A DNA stretch of 45,944 nucleotides from Octopus bimaculoides. Its lineage: Eukaryota. Under the pieces are notes generated by a model. It was not told the origin of the DNA and did no database searches. It was given only the letters and a program-made list of their open reading frames with translations. The stretch spans positions 4,648,985 to 4,694,928 of the forward strand of contig NC_068989.1 in the NCBI RefSeq assembly GCF_001194135.2, read 5' to 3'. Numbering within the stretch: position 1 is the first letter of the stretch; each line of letters starts with the position of its first letter. The translations under genes were made by a program, and so were the position numbers. Of the stretch, positions 1-45,944 are shown piece by piece.

Positions 1-40
<40 letters not shown>

Positions 41-81
41 ATACATATATATATACATACATATATATACATACGTATGTG

Positions 82-8479: not shown

Positions 8480-8773
8480 GAAGGAGGGAGGAAAATCAAT
8501 AACAATCATGTGATACATAGCTGATGATGTAAGTTGTTATAAGTATTGATCTGTTTGGTAATGTGATTGATTCGACAGTGAATGTAGCCAATGTACGCTT
8601 TGATACGGCTGAAGGTGATTGGGAACTGTAAGAAAGAGAGAAAGGCGTCGGCATAAAAGAGCTTCCGGCTTCTTGCTCACTGGTTCTGCAGAGAGTTCTG
8701 AATGAGCAGACGAGCTTACAAAGAGAAGAGAATATTACATATGCGTTCAGCTTTATATGAAATCAGTATATTA

Positions 8774-9062
8774 GGCGCAGGAGTGGATGTGTGGTAAGTA
8801 GCTTATTTACCAACCACATTGTTCCGGGTTCAGTCCCACTGCGTGGTACCTTGGGAAAGTGTCTTCTACTATAGCCTCGGGCCGACCAAATCCTTGTCAG
8901 TGGATTTGGTATACAGAAAGTGAAAGAAGCCCGTCGTGTATATATATATATATATAATGTGTGTGTTTGTCCCCAACATCGCTTGACAACCGATGGTGGT
9001 GTGTTTACGTCCCCGTAACTTACCGGTTCGGCAAAAGAGGCCGATAGAATAAGTATTAGGCT
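8774..9062 (+). mobile_element. SINE family B, 3'-truncated, with internal (AT)n(GT)n
   Basis: Head ggcgcaggagtggatgtgtggtaag...gggttcagtccc; colinear with 44167-44550. Confidence 0.9.
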
Positions 9063-9078
9063 TTATTTTCTCCTATTC

Positions 9079-9114
9079 CTTTCTGATGAAGAGCGTAGGC
9101 TCGAAACGTAAAAG
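9079..9114 (+). ncRNA. Minimal type-I hammerhead ribozyme-like motif (Penelope-type) with 1-nt insertion after A9
   Basis: cttt-CTGATGA-a-GAGC-gtag-GCTC-GAA-ACGT-A-aaag: stem I cttt/aaag, stem II GAGC/GCTC, palindromic stem III ACGT, cleavage triplet GUA. Confidence 0.6.
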
Positions 9115-9153
9115 ACTTATTCTTTTTCCAGAGCGTCAAACTAATGCAGTTAC

Positions 9154-9428
9154 TGGATCTTTCTGATTTGGCGGGCGCCACTTTATATTTATGTTATATT
9201 TAGTGTGTTTTCTACCGAAACACTTTAAAACTTCGTATACTTGTATATTTTGTCTTATAGAACAGAGAAAAAAATTTATATTCGAAGTTATTTCATGTTA
9301 AAAAGATAAAATTTTCTCAATAACACTAAGAGTAAAAGATGTTTTATATGACACATTCTATCAGTGTCCCAAGTTTGAATGTGTTTCGTTAAGAAAACAA
9401 GTGGCGCCCACCAAATCAGAAAGATCCA
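9154..9428. mobile_element. MITE with 30-bp terminal inverted repeats and AT-rich interior
   Basis: 9154-9183 tggatctttctgatttggcgggcgccactt vs reverse complement of 9399-9428: 29/30 identical; TSD unresolved. Confidence 0.75.
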
Positions 9429-9604
9429 ATCTTATGGAATAATGATGTCAAAGTAACTCACGTGCAGTCCTAACCGAGCGAGGCTGTGTTATGTGTGTGT
9501 AAGAAAATAAAGCCTATGCATAAATACACACATACATACATACATACATACATACATACATACATACATACATACATACATGCATTCAAATGGTTTGAGT
9601 CAGT

Positions 9605-9744: not shown

Positions 9745-10038
9745 TGACACTCCGTCGGTTACGACGACGAGGTTTGCAGTTGATCCAAGCAACAGAACGG
9801 CCTGCTCACGAAATTAACGGGCATGTGGCTGAGCACTCCACGAACAGATGTACCCTTAACGTAGTTCTCAAGGAGATTCAGCATGAGATAGAATGTGACA
9901 AGGCCAGCTCTTTGCAAGCTGAGTGGACTGGAGCAAAATGAAATAAAATGCTTGTTCAAGAACACAATGCGCCGCCGGAAATCGAACCCACGACATTACG
10001 ATCGTAAGCCGAATGCCCTAACCACTAAGTCACGCGCC

Positions 10039-18491: not shown

Positions 18492-18503
18492 TGNNNNNNN
18501 NNN

Positions 18504-19881: not shown

Positions 19882-19954
19882 TGTAAATAATGTACATAAT
19901 TCCTCATCTCTTAAATATAATTTAAGAGATGAGGAATTATGTGCATTATTTACA
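19882..19954. repeat. Near-perfect 35-bp inverted repeat with 3-nt loop
   Basis: 19882-19916 pairs with 19920-19954; single mismatch (G-U wobble on the plus strand); loop ATA. Confidence 0.92.
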
Positions 19955-20761
19955 ATGTCGATCGAATGATGTGCTTTCGACACACCGGCACAAAATTGTC
20001 TCTAAAATACCTACGAAGAAAAATGTGTTCCAAAGTCTACAAAATCTTCACACAAATACAACCAAGCCACACCATTTATGAATATTCCAAAAACTTACAT
20101 GACTTTACGGAAAATAAATAATAATAGTAACGAGAACCACAGAAATGATAAACGTTAAAAAAAATTGGTATCTCCATTTTCAACGTCACAGTTTTGCGCA
20201 AAATACATTTTAAAATATTTGCTTCATGCACAAAAATAAATTTTGTAAAATATAAAATGTTTTTTCTCAGTTCTTTAATGCAACATAAATAGCATTAAAC
20301 ATTTTTATAGAACTAAAAGATTTTATCATTACATACTACATTTAGGTAGCAATAATTCAGGAAATTGCTATCTGATCACAGACCATACACTATTCCATAT
20401 TACTCTCAGAACTGACTGCACGGACTCTTTGACAACGGGAATGGTTTTATAACGTACATAAAAATTTTCATTCAATATATAAAAATCAGAAATAGCATTC
20501 GTAAACTAATAAGAGACGATAACTAAACTAGGAATATAAGCTTTCAAAATACAAACAGTGAAAAATGATGCCATTTAAAATAAGCAGATATGTATGTATA
20601 AATTGCATCCATGGGGAGAGTTATATGCTTCAATACACGAATTCACATAAAGAATCTTGCAAACCAAATACAAAAACGAAATATATATATATAGCATATG
20701 GTATAAATATAAACAGGGCAAATTTTAGCCATTTCTCTTCAGACTGAAAAAAAATTACGAA

Positions 20762-20808
20762 AAACCTTAATCGATTTTCGAACCTTGTTGGGTTCTCATC
20801 AGAGACGT
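20762..20808 (-). ncRNA. Minimal type-I hammerhead ribozyme with palindromic stem III
   Basis: Minus strand: acgtct-CTGATGA-GAACC-caacaa-GGTTC-GAA-AATCGATT-A-aggttt. Canonical core, perfect 5-bp stem II, 8-bp palindrome stem III, cleavage triplet UUA, stem I U-A, C-G, U-G, G-U then mismatch. Confidence 0.75.
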
Positions 20809-20850
20809 CTACATCATTCTGACAGTCTCCAGAGAAACGTGCAGCCAAAC

Positions 20851-20860
20851 TATTTATATA
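20851..20860 (-). promoter_or_regulatory. TATA-like box (TATATAAATA) about 45 nt upstream of the hammerhead
   Basis: Motif match and position only; weak in AT-rich DNA. Confidence 0.2.
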
Positions 20861-21451
20861 GTCAACAAATGCAGCAGTTATTCTATGAAGGAATTCTTAA
20901 TTTGCATACCGAAAGTGTTTAACAGTCAATAAATGCTAGTCTCCTGTCAACGGGGATCTTAGTTCACACAGTATCAAGGTATGTTATAATAAATATGTAA
21001 CATATGGTATAATTATAAACAGGGCAAATTTTAGCCATTTCTTCGCATTTCTTCTAGCAGCCGAAGTTCCTTCACATCAAACTCTACCATCTTCAATGCA
21101 TATGGACAGATTAGATAATTAAGTCAGTCAAAAATAATCATCAAAAAGGGAAGAATGTCACGGTTGGATTGCATTTGATCATAAGTCATCTTATACAGGA
21201 TCCATCTAGAGTCTTAACAACATCACCAATAGCAACTGAAGGAGTCTTAACGAGATCGTCTGCTAGAAATAGCACTGTCTGAATAAAACATTGTACGGTC
21301 ACTGTTGGAACGTCTTTGAGTATAGCTGATCTCGGACTAAACCACAACAGCGACAACGGCATACTATGTACGACCACGACACGCCTAACCTCGTTTATCA
21401 CGGGAGTTTGTTTCCAAATAAGCACAGTGATAAATGAATCGTGTCCATGCA

Positions 21452-21630: not shown

Positions 21631-21745
21631 AAGGCACACGGCTTAGGGTGTTCGACTCACGATCGTAAGGTCGTGAGCTCGACATCCAGCGGTACGTTGT
21701 GTACCTGAGCCAAGCACTTTATTTCACAGTGCTCCAATCCAGGCT
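21631..21745 (+). mobile_element. SINE C2-type head fragment
   Basis: aaggcacacggcttagggtgttcgactcacgatcgtaaggtcgtgag...gcactttatttcac..tgctcca, colinear with the minus-strand copy at 10041-9930. Confidence 0.7.
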
Positions 21746-32983: not shown

Positions 32984-33981
32984 TGAAAAACGTTTCCTAA
33001 TCATTTTGAATGGACTTGGTTCGGGTTTCATTAGAGCGTATACGATTGTGTTCAACTTGCTGAAAATGGCAGCGAAATGTCACGTTGATCATATTTTCCC
33101 GTCTTAACGAATAGTACATTAAATAATGTACTCCTTGGAAGACTTTGAGAAGGAAAGAGATAGAATAATCACGGCTGAAATGCCTTTGATCTTGCTAGAT
33201 TTGATATAACGTAGCTAAGACTCGGCCATTCGATCTGCAAGAAATAGTAGCCAATAACTTAAAGGATATGATTATCACTTCTGAAAAAGGAAATCAGAAA
33301 GCTTGTATATGTATATACGAATTGTTCGTGCTCCAGCATGACCGCAGCTGCATGGCTGAAACGAATTAAAGAATATATGTGTGTGTGTGCATAGACATAT
33401 ATATATATATAGATATATATATATATATATATATANNNNNNNNNNNNNNNNNNNNNNNNNNNNNNNNNNNNNNNNNNNNNNNNNNNNNNNNNNNNNNNNN
33501 NNNNNNNNNNNNNNNNNNNNNNNNNNNNNNNNNNNNNNNNNNNNNNNNNNNNNNNNNNNNNNNNNNNNNNNNNNNNNNNNNNNNNNNNNNNNNNNNNNNN
33601 NNNNNNNNNNNNNNNNNNNNNNNNNNNNNNNNNNNNNNNNNNNNNNNNNNNNNNNNNNNNNNNNNNNNNNNNNNNNNNNNNNNNNNNNNNNNNNNNNNNN
33701 NNNNNNNNNNNNNNNNNNNNNNNNNNNNNNNNNNNNNNNNNNNNNNNNNNNNNNNNNNNNNNNNNNNNNNNNNNNNNNNNNNNNNNNNNNNNNNNNNNNN
33801 NNNNNNNNNNNNNNNNNNNNNNNNNNNNNNNNNNNNNNNNNNNNNNNNNNNNNNNNNNNNNNNNNNNNNNNNNNNNNNNNNNNNNNNNNNNNNNNNNNNN
33901 NNNNNNNNNNNNNNNNNNNNNNNNNNNNNNNNNNNNNNNNNNNNNNNNNNNNNNNNNNNNNNNNNNNNNNNNNNNNNNNNN

Positions 33982-39098: not shown

Positions 39099-39880
39099 TT
39101 GGCAGTGAATTGGTTGATGTAAAGAACGACAGAAGAATATAAACGAGGTATAGAATGGAACACAACTCAACTAGATGATTTAGATGACATTTGTTTGTTC
39201 TCATACACACCTCAAGAGTTACAAGATAAATCTGAAAGAATTAGTCAAATAGCCAACACATTAGGTTCCAAAGTCAACGAGAGGAAAACATACACTCTTT
39301 GTAAAAATATAACAGATGCTGACCGTGTGAATTTAACTACCTTGGCATCAAAATAATTGAATTTAACTATCTAGGTACCAAAATAACAATGGATGGAGGC
39401 TGCATTCATGAAATAAATACAAGAATCAGCATAGCTAACCAATCATTCGGGATGTTAAACTCAATATGGAAATCATCAATACTCAGTAATAGCACCAAAA
39501 TATGATTTTACAAAAGCAACATATGTAGCATATTCCTCTATGGATCCAAATATTGGAAAACAACCAAAAGTATTGAAAAGAAATTGGAGGTGTTTCAAAA
39601 TAAACATTTACGAAACATTTTGAAGAATTACTGGCCGAATATGATCTCGAATAACCAACTACACATTAAGGCTAATGTGAGACCAATAAGAGAAACTATC
39701 GAAGCAAGGAGATAGAAATGGCTGGGTTAAGTTTGTCACTATAAACCAAACTCAGTTGTCAGGATTGCTTTGCAATGGGTCCCACAAGGTAAAAGAAAAT
39801 GTGGTCAACTAAAGGAAGTGTAGCAGAGAACAATAACAAAAGATCTTAAAAGCAGAGGATTAACAATGGAACAAGGGATA
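39099..39880 (+). mobile_element. Decayed RTE-clade LINE reverse transcriptase, C-terminal half
   Basis: GIEW..TQLDDLD-DICL; FNYLGTKIT.DGG...EINTRISIANQSFGMLNSIWKS; FLYGSKYW..TK....KLEVFQNKHLRNIL..YWPN.ISN..L; KWLG; IALQW.PQGKRK.G; with stops and a frameshift. Confidence 0.9.
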
Positions 39881-43946: not shown

Positions 43947-44100
43947 AAAGCTATTGCCTTATCGCGTTGGATAAAATGCTTTGCGGTACTTGTTCCGGTT
44001 CTCTGCTTTTCGAGTTCAAATCTCACTGAGGTCAACTTAGCCTTTCATCCTTTCGACTTCGGTAAAGAAAGTACCAATCAGAGCAATGGAGCGACTGAAT
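43947..44100 (+). mobile_element. SINE family A, degenerate
   Basis: aaatgctttgcggta...gagttcaaatc...gaggtcaacttagcctttcatcctttcg...aagtacc. Confidence 0.7.
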
Positions 44101-44166
44101 TGTTAGATCGTCGAACGAGGTATCTTGTGTCTGTTCTGGCTCTGTGTTATGAATGTATACATATAC

Positions 44167-44550
44167 AGGCGCAGGAGTGGCTGTGTTGTAAGTAGCTTGC
44201 TTACTAACCACATGGTCCCGGGTTCAGTCCCATTGATGGCGCTTTCGGCACCTCTAGCCTCGGGCCGGTCAAAGCCTTGTGAGTGGATTTGGTAGACGGA
44301 AACTGAAAGAAGCCTGTCGTATATATATATATGTATGTATGTATGTGTGTCTGTGTTTGTCCCCCTCCCACACACACACCATCGCTTGACAACCGATGTT
44401 GGTGTCTTTACGTCCACTTAATTTAGCGGTTCGGCAAAAGTGGCCGAGAGAATAAGTACTCGGCTTACAAAGAATAAGTCCTGGGGTCGATTTGTTCGAT
44501 TAAAGGCGGTACTCCAGCATGGCCGCAGTCAAATGACTGAAAAGAATAGG
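44167..44550 (+). mobile_element. SINE family B, full length, with internal microsatellite
   Basis: A-box-like tggctgtgttg, B-box-like gggttcagtccc; internal (AT)n(ATGT)n(GT)n about 44319-44350; 3' end gcatggccgcagtcaaatgactgaaaag. Confidence 0.92.
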
Positions 44551-45249
44551 TGTCTAGTTTCCATAAAATGTTCGTGTGTCTATGCTCATAGTATGGAGTC
44601 ATTTTTATTTTATTCAACATGGCAACATGCCCGCCACTTTTCAAGCTGCGACCCATCCCACCACGAGAACTACTGATTAAAGTGAGATAATAAAAAAAAT
44701 AATGATAATAAAAAGCTATACCTTTCAATAAATAGTCATAAGACTAGAACAAGGTACAATAAATGAAGATTTGGCAACACCGTAAAGAATGTGATACAGA
44801 GAAAACTGCTAAAAGAATAAGAAAGAATATGTAAAACAAGCGAGCAGGCTAACCAGATTAAATTAAATGTTTTCTGATCGTCCAGAAAATTGTAATTACC
44901 AGTGGGGCCAGATAAAGCGACAGTTGCGAGGTTTAGACTCTTTGACTGAGAACCTGAAGGAAGAATACGGAGTGAGGAGATGGTCTTTAGAGAAGAGATA
45001 TGAAGCAGAAGATTGATACACGAATCGTATGGAATGATGTGACGATTTCAATTTTCCGGAGCGATCGATTGAAATCTTTTGCGCAGGTGTTTTACAGTAA
45101 CAATGATGCATCCTGTCTGTGGAATGTTGTGGGGTGGAAGTTGTTTTGAAATTGCCTTGTGGCTGTATTGAATTATAAATTAGCAAGGAGCTATTTGGAA
45201 ATAAAATTACTTCTCGATCAATGATGCTTTCCACATGTTTCACACCATC

Positions 45250-45598
45250 TATCTTTTACTAGTTTCAGTCATCGGGCTGCGGCCTTCCTGGAGCATCGCT
45301 TTGAAGGATTTAGTCGAATTAATCGACCCCGGTACTTATTCTATCGGTCTATGTTGCCGAACCTCTAAGTTACGGCAATGTAATCAAACACAGGTTGTCA
45401 AGCGATGGTGGAGACCAAGACACAAACACACATATACGACAGAATGCCACACAGTTTCTGTCCATTAAAATCATGGTATTGTTCGACCCTAGGCTACAGT
45501 AGGTAGAAGGCACTCAAGATGCCGCTCAGTGGAGCTGAACCCGAAATCACGTTGTTGCAAAATGAGCTTCTTAACCATACAGCCATGCCTGCGCACAT
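45250..45598 (-). mobile_element. SINE family B, degenerate, near full length
   Basis: Reverse complement colinear with 44167-44550. Confidence 0.75.
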
Positions 45599-45628
45599 AA
45601 AATTATTTTCAACAAGTTGGTACCCATA

Positions 45629-45944
45629 TTGTTGTTGTTGTTGTTGGCACTCCGTCGCTTACGACGACGAGGGTTCCAGTTGATCCGATCAACGGAACAG
45701 CCTGCTCGTGAAATTAACGTGCAAGTGGCTGAGCACTCCACAGACACGTGTACCCTCAACGTAGTTCTCGGGGATATTCAGCGTGGCACAGTGCGACAAG
45801 GCTGACCCTTTGAATTACAGGTACAACAGAAACAAGAAGAAAGAAAGAGTGAGAGAAAGTTGTGGTGAAAGAGTACAGCAGGGTTCGCCACCATCCCCTG
45901 CCGGAGCCTCGTGGAGCTTTTAGGTGTTTTCGCTCAATAAACAC
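45629..45944 (-). mobile_element. SINE family C, young copy, head beyond window edge
   Basis: Near-identical reverse complement of 4990-5308; (TTG)n tail at 45629-45646. Confidence 0.92.

What the first reader, a model, noticed from the sequence alone, without database searches (positions are those of the whole stretch)
20695..21042. 306-bp hammerhead unit with 42-bp terminal redundancy: candidate non-LTR retrozyme or Penelope pseudo-LTR insertion
Seen: a 42-bp sequence (41/42 identical) occurs at 20695 and 21001 and brackets the hammerhead; period 306 bp. Known: metazoan non-LTR retrozymes are tandem units of a few hundred nt, each with one type-I hammerhead, that yield circular RNAs, and Penelope elements form partial tandem repeats. 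Inference: either one monomer plus a partial second (rolling or circular template) or a 264-bp insert with an unusually long target duplication. The near-identity of the repeats suggests a recent event. This is the best candidate for an undescribed system in the window.
Basis: partly seen in the sequence, partly recalled or inferred. Interest (0 to 1): 0.7.

Follow-up and report, generated by a model that had tools for sequence, protein, structure and literature searches.

The report
Solitary hammerhead-bearing retroelement copy
A single ~350-bp non-coding copy of a small mobile element carrying a Penelope-type hammerhead ribozyme motif, with the same 42 bp at both ends, sits in repeat-rich cephalopod DNA; it is an ordinary and probably inert relative of elements already described in many animals.

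Summary
A 42-nt direct repeat (41/42 identical) lies at 20695-20736 and 21001-21042, 306 bp apart. It brackets a complete hammerhead (HHR) core on the minus strand, with cleavage predicted between 20768 and 20767. Rfam does not call the motif, but Rfam also misses clear Penelope-type minimal HHRs found in metagenome loci. A literature-based descriptor finds this site and one other (9083+) in the window and none in 300 shuffled windows. The HHR is the small, dimer-dependent type with a palindromic helix III (AAUCGAUU), typical of Penelope-like elements (PLEs). The locus holds only 1.14 units and one HHR. No RT or GIY-YIG ORF was found in the 46-kb window, no second copy of the interior, and the unit RNA is not unusually structured. 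The host is a cephalopod, probably Octopus. My best reading (about 0.5) is a solitary non-autonomous PLE/retrozyme-type retrocopy of slightly more than one unit of a tandem or circular RNA, inserted at a (TA)n microsatellite. The main rival (about 0.3) is a 264-bp insert with a 42-bp target-site duplication. These cannot be separated without the rest of the genome. It is a new member of a known kind, not an undescribed system, and interest is low.

The parts
21001..21042 (-). Upstream (5', in element orientation) copy of the 42-nt terminal repeat
   Evidence: 41/42 identical to 20695-20736, spacing 306
20737..21000 (-). 264-nt interior of the unit, non-coding, 34% GC, single-copy in the window; carries the hammerhead near its 3' end
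   Evidence: No significant second copy. No Pfam hit and no protein homologue for its ORFs
20695..20736 (-). Downstream (3') copy of the 42-nt terminal repeat; spans +32 to +73 after the predicted HHR cleavage site
20757..20808 (-). Type-I hammerhead motif of the Penelope-like small/dimeric kind. Helix I 5' strand 20808-20803; CUGAUGA 20802-20796; helix II 20795-20780; GAAA 20779-20776; palindromic helix III/loop 3 AAUCGAUU 20776-20769; A17 at 20768; cleavage 20768|20767; helix I 3' strand 20767-20757
   Evidence: Sequence; pattern; descriptor against shuffles. Metagenome locus L014 has the same helix II and a 6-nt palindromic loop 3. The monomeric HHR fold is +0.4 to +2.3 kcal/mol against an MFE of -10.6
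20747..20754 (-). T8 run 13 nt after the cleavage site; would terminate a Pol III transcript
   Evidence: Read from the sequence; the functional reading is inference only
20681..20693 (.). (TA)6 microsatellite 1 nt (G 20694) from the 3' end of the 348-bp block; candidate target/priming site
   Evidence: About 4.9% of window positions lie this close to a TA run. (TA)n is the preferred target of Neptune and Naiad PLEs (PMC8557442)
21036..21054 (.). 10-nt tandem CATTTCTTCG x1.9 spanning the 5' junction (end of repeat copy B plus flank); possible junction microhomology or a host feature
   Evidence: TRF; not statistically compelling

Best explanation
The 348-bp block (21042 to 20695, minus strand) is one solitary, non-autonomous retroelement copy of the Penelope-like / non-LTR-retrozyme kind. 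I infer that a Penelope-type reverse transcriptase, supplied in trans, copied slightly more than one 306-nt unit (306 + 42 nt) of a head-to-tail multimeric or circular hammerhead-bearing RNA. The copy was then inserted by target-primed reverse transcription at a (TA)n microsatellite. On this reading the 42-nt terminal redundancy is a miniature pseudo-LTR, meaning the overlap of the second unit. Its length is close to the 30-40-nt 'tail' that PLE insertions carry because reverse transcription can start at two internal sites. The hammerhead is the small type with a palindromic helix III that needs a second copy to form an active dimer. With one HHR the locus cannot release a unit-length RNA and is most likely a dead-end copy. 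Shown: the repeat, the HHR motif and its type, the single copy number in the window, the absence of ORFs, and the (TA)n junction. Inferred: the tandem or circular template, PLE-mediated insertion, and inactivity.
For: The repeat and its period are established. The complete HHR core has the G10.1-C11.1 pair and an 8-nt palindrome at helix III. The descriptor gives 2 hits in the window against 0 in 300 shuffles and a mean of 0.03 per shuffle in relaxed form. The same HHR architecture recurs in eukaryote-like metagenome loci (L014; the L003/L012 family with a CGCG loop). PMC4209133 describes palindromic helix III/loop 3 and G10.1-C11.1 as hallmarks of PLE HHRs, which are mostly found as single motifs in truncated PLEs. 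PLE insertions are typically 5'-truncated partial tandems with an optional 30-40-bp tail (PMC8557442, PMC11167929, PMC8969392). Reported PLE TSDs are 8-10 bp (PMC3846280), so a 42-bp TSD would be atypical. The 3' end lies 1 nt from a (TA)6 run, and (TA)n is a preferred PLE target (PMC8557442). There is a 9/12 match between the (TA)n flank and the bases that follow the 42-mer in the unit. Unit size (306 bp) and GC (34%) fit invertebrate non-LTR retrozymes, and solo monomers are common (PMC7229834; bioRxiv 10.64898/2026.07.22.740005). The host is a cephalopod, a group in which PLEs and hammerhead hits are reported (PMC6962438, PMC8557442).
Against: No other copy of the interior or the 42-mer could be found, so the multicopy nature of the family is untested. 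Searches covered the window, viral contigs, prokaryotic genomes and protein space. No RT or GIY-YIG ORF was found in the window. One locus cannot show that the 42-mer belongs to the element rather than to the target. The 306-nt unit RNA is not unusually structured (z -1.1 to -2.0, 55-61% paired), unlike the 'highly self-paired' retrozyme circles. Helix I is weak, and a competing 7-bp hairpin sequesters GAAA. The (TA)n adjacency alone is only about p 0.05-0.1.
Confidence: 0.5

Rival explanations
1. A 264-bp hammerhead-bearing fragment (20737-21000) inserted into a staggered break. The fragment would be a 5'-truncated 3' end of a PLE or a SINE-like HHR element. The 42-mer would then be host DNA duplicated as an unusually long target-site duplication.
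For: The repeat boundary is sharp at 20736|20737 and 21042|21043, as expected for a TSD. The two copies are near-identical (41/42). Metazoan retrozyme TSDs are said to be 'larger than 4 bp' (PMC7229834). The interior alone is single-copy in the window, so nothing ties the 42-mer to it.
Against: 42 bp is far longer than documented PLE TSDs of 8-10 bp (PMC3846280) and than most LINE-type TSDs. There is no poly(A) or simple-repeat tail at either end of the 264-bp insert. The (TA)n run would then be 42 bp away from the priming nick, which loses the fit to PLE target preference. The 9/12 similarity continuing beyond the 42-mer would have to be chance (about p 0.07).
Confidence: 0.3
2. An active non-LTR retrozyme locus that is transcribed, self-cleaves and yields a ~306-nt circular RNA.
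For: The unit length, low GC and a type-I HHR match the retrozyme description (PMC7229834).
Against: The block has only one HHR in 1.14 units, and two cleavage sites are needed to release a monomer (searches find no second HHR nearby). The HHR is the dimer-dependent minimal type with an unfavourable monomer fold. The unit RNA is not strongly self-paired. Li et al. define an active retrozyme as one with an HHR in all tandem repeats (bioRxiv 10.64898/2026.07.22.740005).
Confidence: 0.05
3. A local non-transposon duplication (replication slippage or break repair), with a hammerhead-like motif that is incidental.
For: There is no detectable family, no ORF and no canonical retroelement termini. Rfam is silent.
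Against: A full HHR core plus a 5-bp helix II, a G10.1-C11.1 pair and an 8-nt palindrome did not arise in any of 300 shuffled windows. Slippage would duplicate a contiguous block, not just 42 bp flanking 264 bp of unrelated sequence.
Confidence: 0.1
4. An assembly artefact of a gapped short-read draft.
For: The window has 12 N runs and dense microsatellites.
Against: There is no gap within about 2 kb of the locus (nearest at 18494-18503 and 23001). The copies differ by one base and are 306 bp apart with unique sequence between them, which is not the usual unmerged-overlap pattern at a gap.
Confidence: 0.05

Closest known systems
Penelope-like element pseudo-LTR / truncated PLE copies carrying minimal hammerheads (Cervera & de la Pena 2014, PMC4209133; Craig et al. 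2021, PMC8557442; Frangieh et al. 2024, PMC11167929)
   Same: It has a type-I HHR with a conserved core, a G10.1-C11.1 pair, a small palindromic helix III/loop 3 that implies dimer-dependent cleavage, and a weak helix I. It occurs as a single dispersed motif. It shows a head-to-tail terminal redundancy similar in size to the 30-40-bp PLE tail, and its junction is at a (TA)n microsatellite.
   Different: There is no RT/GIY-YIG ORF within the 46-kb window. The repeat period is 306 bp rather than about 3 kb, so it would be a non-autonomous derivative. The redundancy is only 42 bp, whereas pLTRs are usually about 200 bp or more. There is no unpaired base between A9 and G10.1. No sequence similarity to any PLE could be tested.
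Metazoan non-LTR retrozymes (Cervera & de la Pena 2020, PMC7229834; Li et al. 2026, bioRxiv 10.64898/2026.07.22.740005)
   Same: It is a non-coding unit of about 300 bp with GC below 45% and one type-I HHR per unit. Solo 'monomer' derivatives of these elements are known to be dispersed through genomes, and the elements are proposed to derive from PLE pLTRs.
   Different: Only 1.14 units are present, not a tandem array. The HHR is the minimal PLE type rather than a canonical HHR with loop 1-loop 2 contacts. The unit RNA is not highly self-paired. Copy number and circular RNA are untested.
Schistosome Sm-alpha / Sj-alpha SINE-like hammerhead elements (reviewed in PMC6765202)
   Same: These are also short (about 335 bp) non-coding dispersed or tandem elements with a type-I HHR. 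The T8 run after the HHR here is compatible with Pol III termination.
   Different: ARAGORN found no tRNA-like head, and no A-box/B-box pair is evident. Schistosome HHRs have a stable helix III and are active as monomers (my own knowledge).

Membership tests
Hammerhead ribozyme (type I, PLE-type small variant) | Conserved core CUGANGA ... GAAA ... UH in the correct order | tested here: met
   CUGAUGA 20802-20796, GAAA 20779-20776, U16.1 20769, A17 20768
Hammerhead ribozyme (type I, PLE-type small variant) | Helix II closed by G10.1-C11.1; helix I formed by the flanks; more than chance | tested here: met
   Helix II is 5 bp (GAACC/GGUUC). Helix I is 4 bp, two of them G.U wobbles. The descriptor gives 0 hits in 300 shuffles
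Hammerhead ribozyme (type I, PLE-type small variant) | Palindromic 15.2-16.2 / loop 3 that allows a dimeric helix III | tested here: met
   AAUCGAUU is a perfect 8-nt palindrome. The feature is listed in PMC4209133
Hammerhead ribozyme (type I, PLE-type small variant) | Match to the curated Rfam hammerhead models | tested here: not met
   No hit at the gathering threshold or at E<=10. The models also miss the minimal HHRs in L003, L012 and L014, so the test has low power for this subtype
Hammerhead ribozyme (type I, PLE-type small variant) | Self-cleavage activity | not testable with these tools
   The predicted monomer fold is +0.4 to +2.3 kcal/mol against an MFE of -10.6, which suggests poor activity as a monomer
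Metazoan non-LTR retrozyme | Tandem repeats (at least a dimer) with an HHR in every unit | tested here: not met
   1.14 units and one HHR. TRF finds no array, and there is no second HHR within the locus
Metazoan non-LTR retrozyme | Unit of 150-450 bp, non-coding, GC below 45-50% | tested here: met
   306 bp and 34.3% GC. No protein or Pfam hits
Metazoan non-LTR retrozyme | Many copies in the genome | not testable with these tools
   The host genome is not searchable here. The element is single-copy in the 46-kb window
Metazoan non-LTR retrozyme | Expressed as a highly self-paired circular RNA | tested here: inconclusive
   Circular-fold z-scores are -1.3 (sense) and -2.0 (antisense), with 56-61% paired. 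Expression is not testable
Penelope-like element (autonomous) | ORF with PLE RT and GIY-YIG endonuclease between pLTRs | tested here: not met
   No RT or GIY-YIG Pfam hit in the minus frames of 19.6-22.7 kb, nor in all non-low-complexity ORFs of at least 55 aa in window positions 1-44743; the seven such ORFs at 44899-45944 were not scanned. The adjacent 156-aa ORF has no homologues
PLE-derived insertion (pLTR / non-autonomous) | Head-to-tail partial tandem (pLTR) and/or 30-40-bp tail | tested here: inconclusive
   A 42-bp terminal redundancy is present, but it cannot be told apart from a TSD without other copies
PLE-derived insertion (pLTR / non-autonomous) | Insertion bias for microsatellites such as (TA)n | tested here: met
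   A (TA)6 run at 20681-20693 lies 1 nt from the 3' end of the block. The background chance is about 5% per boundary
PLE-derived insertion (pLTR / non-autonomous) | Sequence similarity to the pLTR of a PLE in the same genome | not testable with these tools

The most novel reading that the evidence does not exclude
The 42-nt terminal redundancy could be the direct genomic footprint of reverse transcription running more than once around a ~306-nt circular hammerhead RNA. That would mark an as yet undescribed cephalopod family of PLE-dependent retrozymes that use the small dimeric HHR rather than the canonical one.
Probability: 0.12. Interest if true: 0.5.

Novelty: new member of a known kind. 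Interest (0 to 1): 0.2.

Why it matters
If the best reading is right, the locus adds a cephalopod example to the growing evidence that small hammerhead-bearing repeats are non-autonomous passengers of Penelope-like elements. It also shows that Rfam-based annotation misses this ribozyme subtype. A locus with just over one unit is a useful marker for how such elements are copied, whether by read-through of a tandem or circular template or by a long staggered break. On its own it changes nothing fundamental and probably has no function for the host.

Tried and rejected
I tried the following, and none changed the picture.

- **Rfam.** I searched the whole window at the gathering threshold, a 1.2-kb slice and a 101-nt slice at E<=10. 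There was no hammerhead hit. I rejected this as evidence against the motif because Rfam also misses obvious minimal HHRs in L003, L012 and L014.
- **Other copies in the window.** I used blastn with word size 7 and Smith-Waterman alignment. An apparent degenerate HHR-like stretch at about 32985-33090 (z about 4 locally) is not significant window-wide, because 11 of 60 shuffles reach the window-best score.
- **Other copies elsewhere.** An HHR pattern scan of metagenomes gave 19 loci that share only the ribozyme core. Viral contigs and prokaryotic genomes gave nothing. A translated ORF across the unit has no relatives among 5.8 billion proteins.
- **Linked Penelope ORFs.** Pfam on the six-frame or ORF translations was negative. 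The upstream 156-aa ORF has no homologues.
- **tRNA-derived SINE head.** ARAGORN found none.
- **Bacterial promoter/terminator scan.** This is irrelevant for a eukaryote.
- **An older, larger tandem array around the locus.** TRF and flank alignments found none.
- **A paralogous empty site for the flanks.** Only SINE-like pieces more than 300 bp away are repeated.
- **Energy of the double-hammerhead dimer.** It could not be evaluated because the fold is pseudoknotted in dot-bracket form.
- **Older papers on Penelope TSD lengths.** The papers I looked for (PMC19282, PMC522041, PMC5785218) are not held.

Full report
**Observation**

CATATGGTATAAATATAAACAGGGCAAATTTTAGCCATTTCT at 20695-20736 recurs at 21001-21042 with one mismatch, and the start-to-start spacing is 306. 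The match extends weakly into 12 more AT-rich bases on the low-coordinate side (9/12). It stops abruptly on the other side. blastn gives E about 1e-17 for the 54-nt extended match, so it is not chance. No N gap lies within about 2 kb.

**The hammerhead**

The hammerhead lies on the minus strand. Its parts read in order as follows.

- Helix I 5' strand: ...GACGUCU
- Core: CUGAUGA (20802-20796)
- Helix II: GAACC-CAACAA-GGUUC (20795-20780)
- GAAA (20779-20776)
- Palindrome: the last A of GAAA opens the perfect 8-nt palindrome AAUCGAUU (20776-20769)
- A17 (20768), with the cleavage site before AGGU...

Helix I is weak. It is either 4 bp with two wobbles, or 3 bp + U5 bulge + 3 bp.

**Is the motif more than chance?**

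Rfam release 15 reports no hammerhead. This held at the gathering threshold, at E<=10 on 1.2 kb, and on a 101-nt slice. I do not treat this as evidence against the motif. A scan of metagenome contigs for CTGATGAGAACC-N4-8-GGTTCGAAA returned 19 loci. Several of them are textbook Penelope-type minimal hammerheads:

- the L003/L005/L009/L012/L013/L015/L018 family: ...GCCAU CUGAUGA GAACC..GGUUC GAAA CGCG UC^AUGGC;
- L014: GGUGA CUGAUGA GAACC CAAAAA GGUUC GAAA UAGCUA UA^UCACC.

Rfam misses these as well.

I therefore wrote a descriptor from the features published for PLE hammerheads (PMC4209133). It requires the core, an optional base between A9 and G10.1, helix II of at least 4 bp closed by G-C, a palindromic loop 3, UH, and helix I of at least 4 bp. 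The window has two hits, at 20802(-) and 9083(+). Three hundred dinucleotide shuffles had none. A relaxed version finds the same two sites against 0.03 expected per shuffled window. The motif is therefore real. It is also of the small type with a palindromic helix III, which the literature associates with PLEs and with dimer-dependent cleavage. Consistent with that, the monomeric hammerhead fold is unfavourable (+0.4 to +2.3 kcal/mol). The MFE of -10.6 kcal/mol comes from a competing hairpin that sequesters GAAA.

**Surroundings and host**

- The interior 264 nt has no significant second copy in the window.
- There is no larger degenerate array.
- The immediate flanks are unique. SINE-like pieces begin about 350 bp away.
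- No RT or GIY-YIG domain is detectable in the minus frames of 19.6-22.7 kb. None is detectable in any non-low-complexity ORF of at least 55 aa in window positions 1-44743; the last batch of seven ORFs (44899-45944) was not scanned.
- The ORFs across and next to the unit have no homologues.
- An RTE-like LINE fragment at 39.1-39.7 kb is most similar to Octopus bimaculoides and O. sinensis proteins. The host is therefore a cephalopod. PLEs and hammerhead hits are already reported in this group (PMC6962438, PMC8557442).
- The window is a gapped draft, dense in (TA)n and (CA)n.

**What it is**

Two readings fit.

Reading A: the block is a retrocopy of 1.14 units of a tandem or circular 306-nt RNA, so the 42-mer is element sequence.

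Reading B: a 264-bp insert is flanked by a 42-bp target-site duplication.

The evidence favouring A is as follows.

- PLE insertions are characteristically 5'-truncated partial tandems (pLTRs) with an optional 30-40-bp tail. The tail arises because reverse transcription starts at either of two internal sites (PMC8557442, PMC11167929, PMC8969392).
- Documented PLE TSDs are 8-10 bp (PMC3846280).
- Under A, the 3' end of the element (20695) lies 1 nt from a (TA)6 run, and (TA)n is the preferred target of Neptune and Naiad PLEs (PMC8557442). About 5% of window positions lie this close to a TA run.
- The bases that follow the 42-mer in the unit resemble the (TA)n flank at 9 of 12 positions, which is compatible with priming by microhomology.
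- Non-LTR retrozymes of about 300 bp are known in invertebrates, and solo monomers are common (PMC7229834; bioRxiv 10.64898/2026.07.22.740005).

The evidence favouring B is the sharp repeat boundary and the fact that nothing ties the 42-mer to the interior at a second locus.

I put A at about 0.5 and B at about 0.3. The remainder is split among a non-transposon duplication, an assembly artefact, and an active retrozyme locus.

**Function**

With one dimer-type HHR in 1.14 units, the locus cannot excise a unit-length RNA. The 306-nt unit is not unusually self-paired (z -1.1 to -2.0). I conclude it is most likely an inert, fairly recent copy. The 1/42 divergence between the repeats supports 'recent', but the confidence interval on one mismatch is wide.

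**Comparison and novelty**

It works like, and is best filed next to, PLE-derived hammerhead elements (pLTR fragments and monomeric non-LTR retrozymes). It fails the defining test for an active retrozyme, which is a tandem array with an HHR in each unit. It also fails the test for an autonomous PLE, which is an RT/EN ORF. Family-level tests (copy number, pLTR homology, circular RNA) could not be run because no cephalopod genome is reachable with these tools. The novelty is a new member of a known kind, and interest is low (0.2). The most novel reading not excluded is that the redundancy records reverse transcription around a circular RNA from an undescribed cephalopod retrozyme family that uses the small dimeric HHR (p about 0.12).

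Noticed in passing
window 9079-9114 (+), context 9057-9516: A second hammerhead-like motif: CUUU-CUGAUGA-A-GAGC GUAG GCUC-GAAA-CG-UA^AAAG. It has the unpaired base after A9 and the G10.1-C11.1 pair typical of PLE minimal HHRs. It is significant against shuffles. It lies about 15 nt after a truncated SINE and inside a nested inverted-repeat structure (arms 9057-9071/9502-9516 at 100% and 9154-9183/9399-9428 at 97%). The other arm of that structure lacks the core. It shows no similarity to the 20.7-kb unit beyond the core.
   Followed up: partly
window 19882-19954: A 35-nt near-perfect hairpin palindrome (97%, 3-nt loop) lies 740 bp from the unit. PLE pLTRs often carry terminal palindromes, but no link to the unit could be shown.
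   Followed up: no
window 39123-39712 (+): A frameshifted RTE-like non-LTR reverse-transcriptase C-terminal fragment. It is 63-68% identical to Octopus bimaculoides and O. sinensis proteins, which identifies the host as a cephalopod.
   Followed up: partly
locus L014 (Ga0308020_1014241) 21-65 (+): A metagenome contig carries a hammerhead with the same helix II, an almost identical loop 2 and a 6-nt palindromic loop 3. It lies antisense just 3' of a 470-aa non-LTR RT ORF. Rfam does not detect it.
   Followed up: partly
window 20776-20784 (-): The helix II 3' strand plus GAAA reads GGTTCGAAA. This resembles a Pol III B-box (GGTTCGANNCC, recalled from my own knowledge), and a T8 run follows 22 nt downstream. 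No A-box or tRNA-like head was found.
   Followed up: partly
whole window: The window is a gapped draft assembly with 12 N runs of 10-913 nt. It has 79 (TA)n runs of at least 10 nt, several copies of tRNA-derived SINE-like repeats (for example 8770-9063, 9924-10021, 21643-21741, 44100-44740), and long low-complexity tracts.
   Followed up: no
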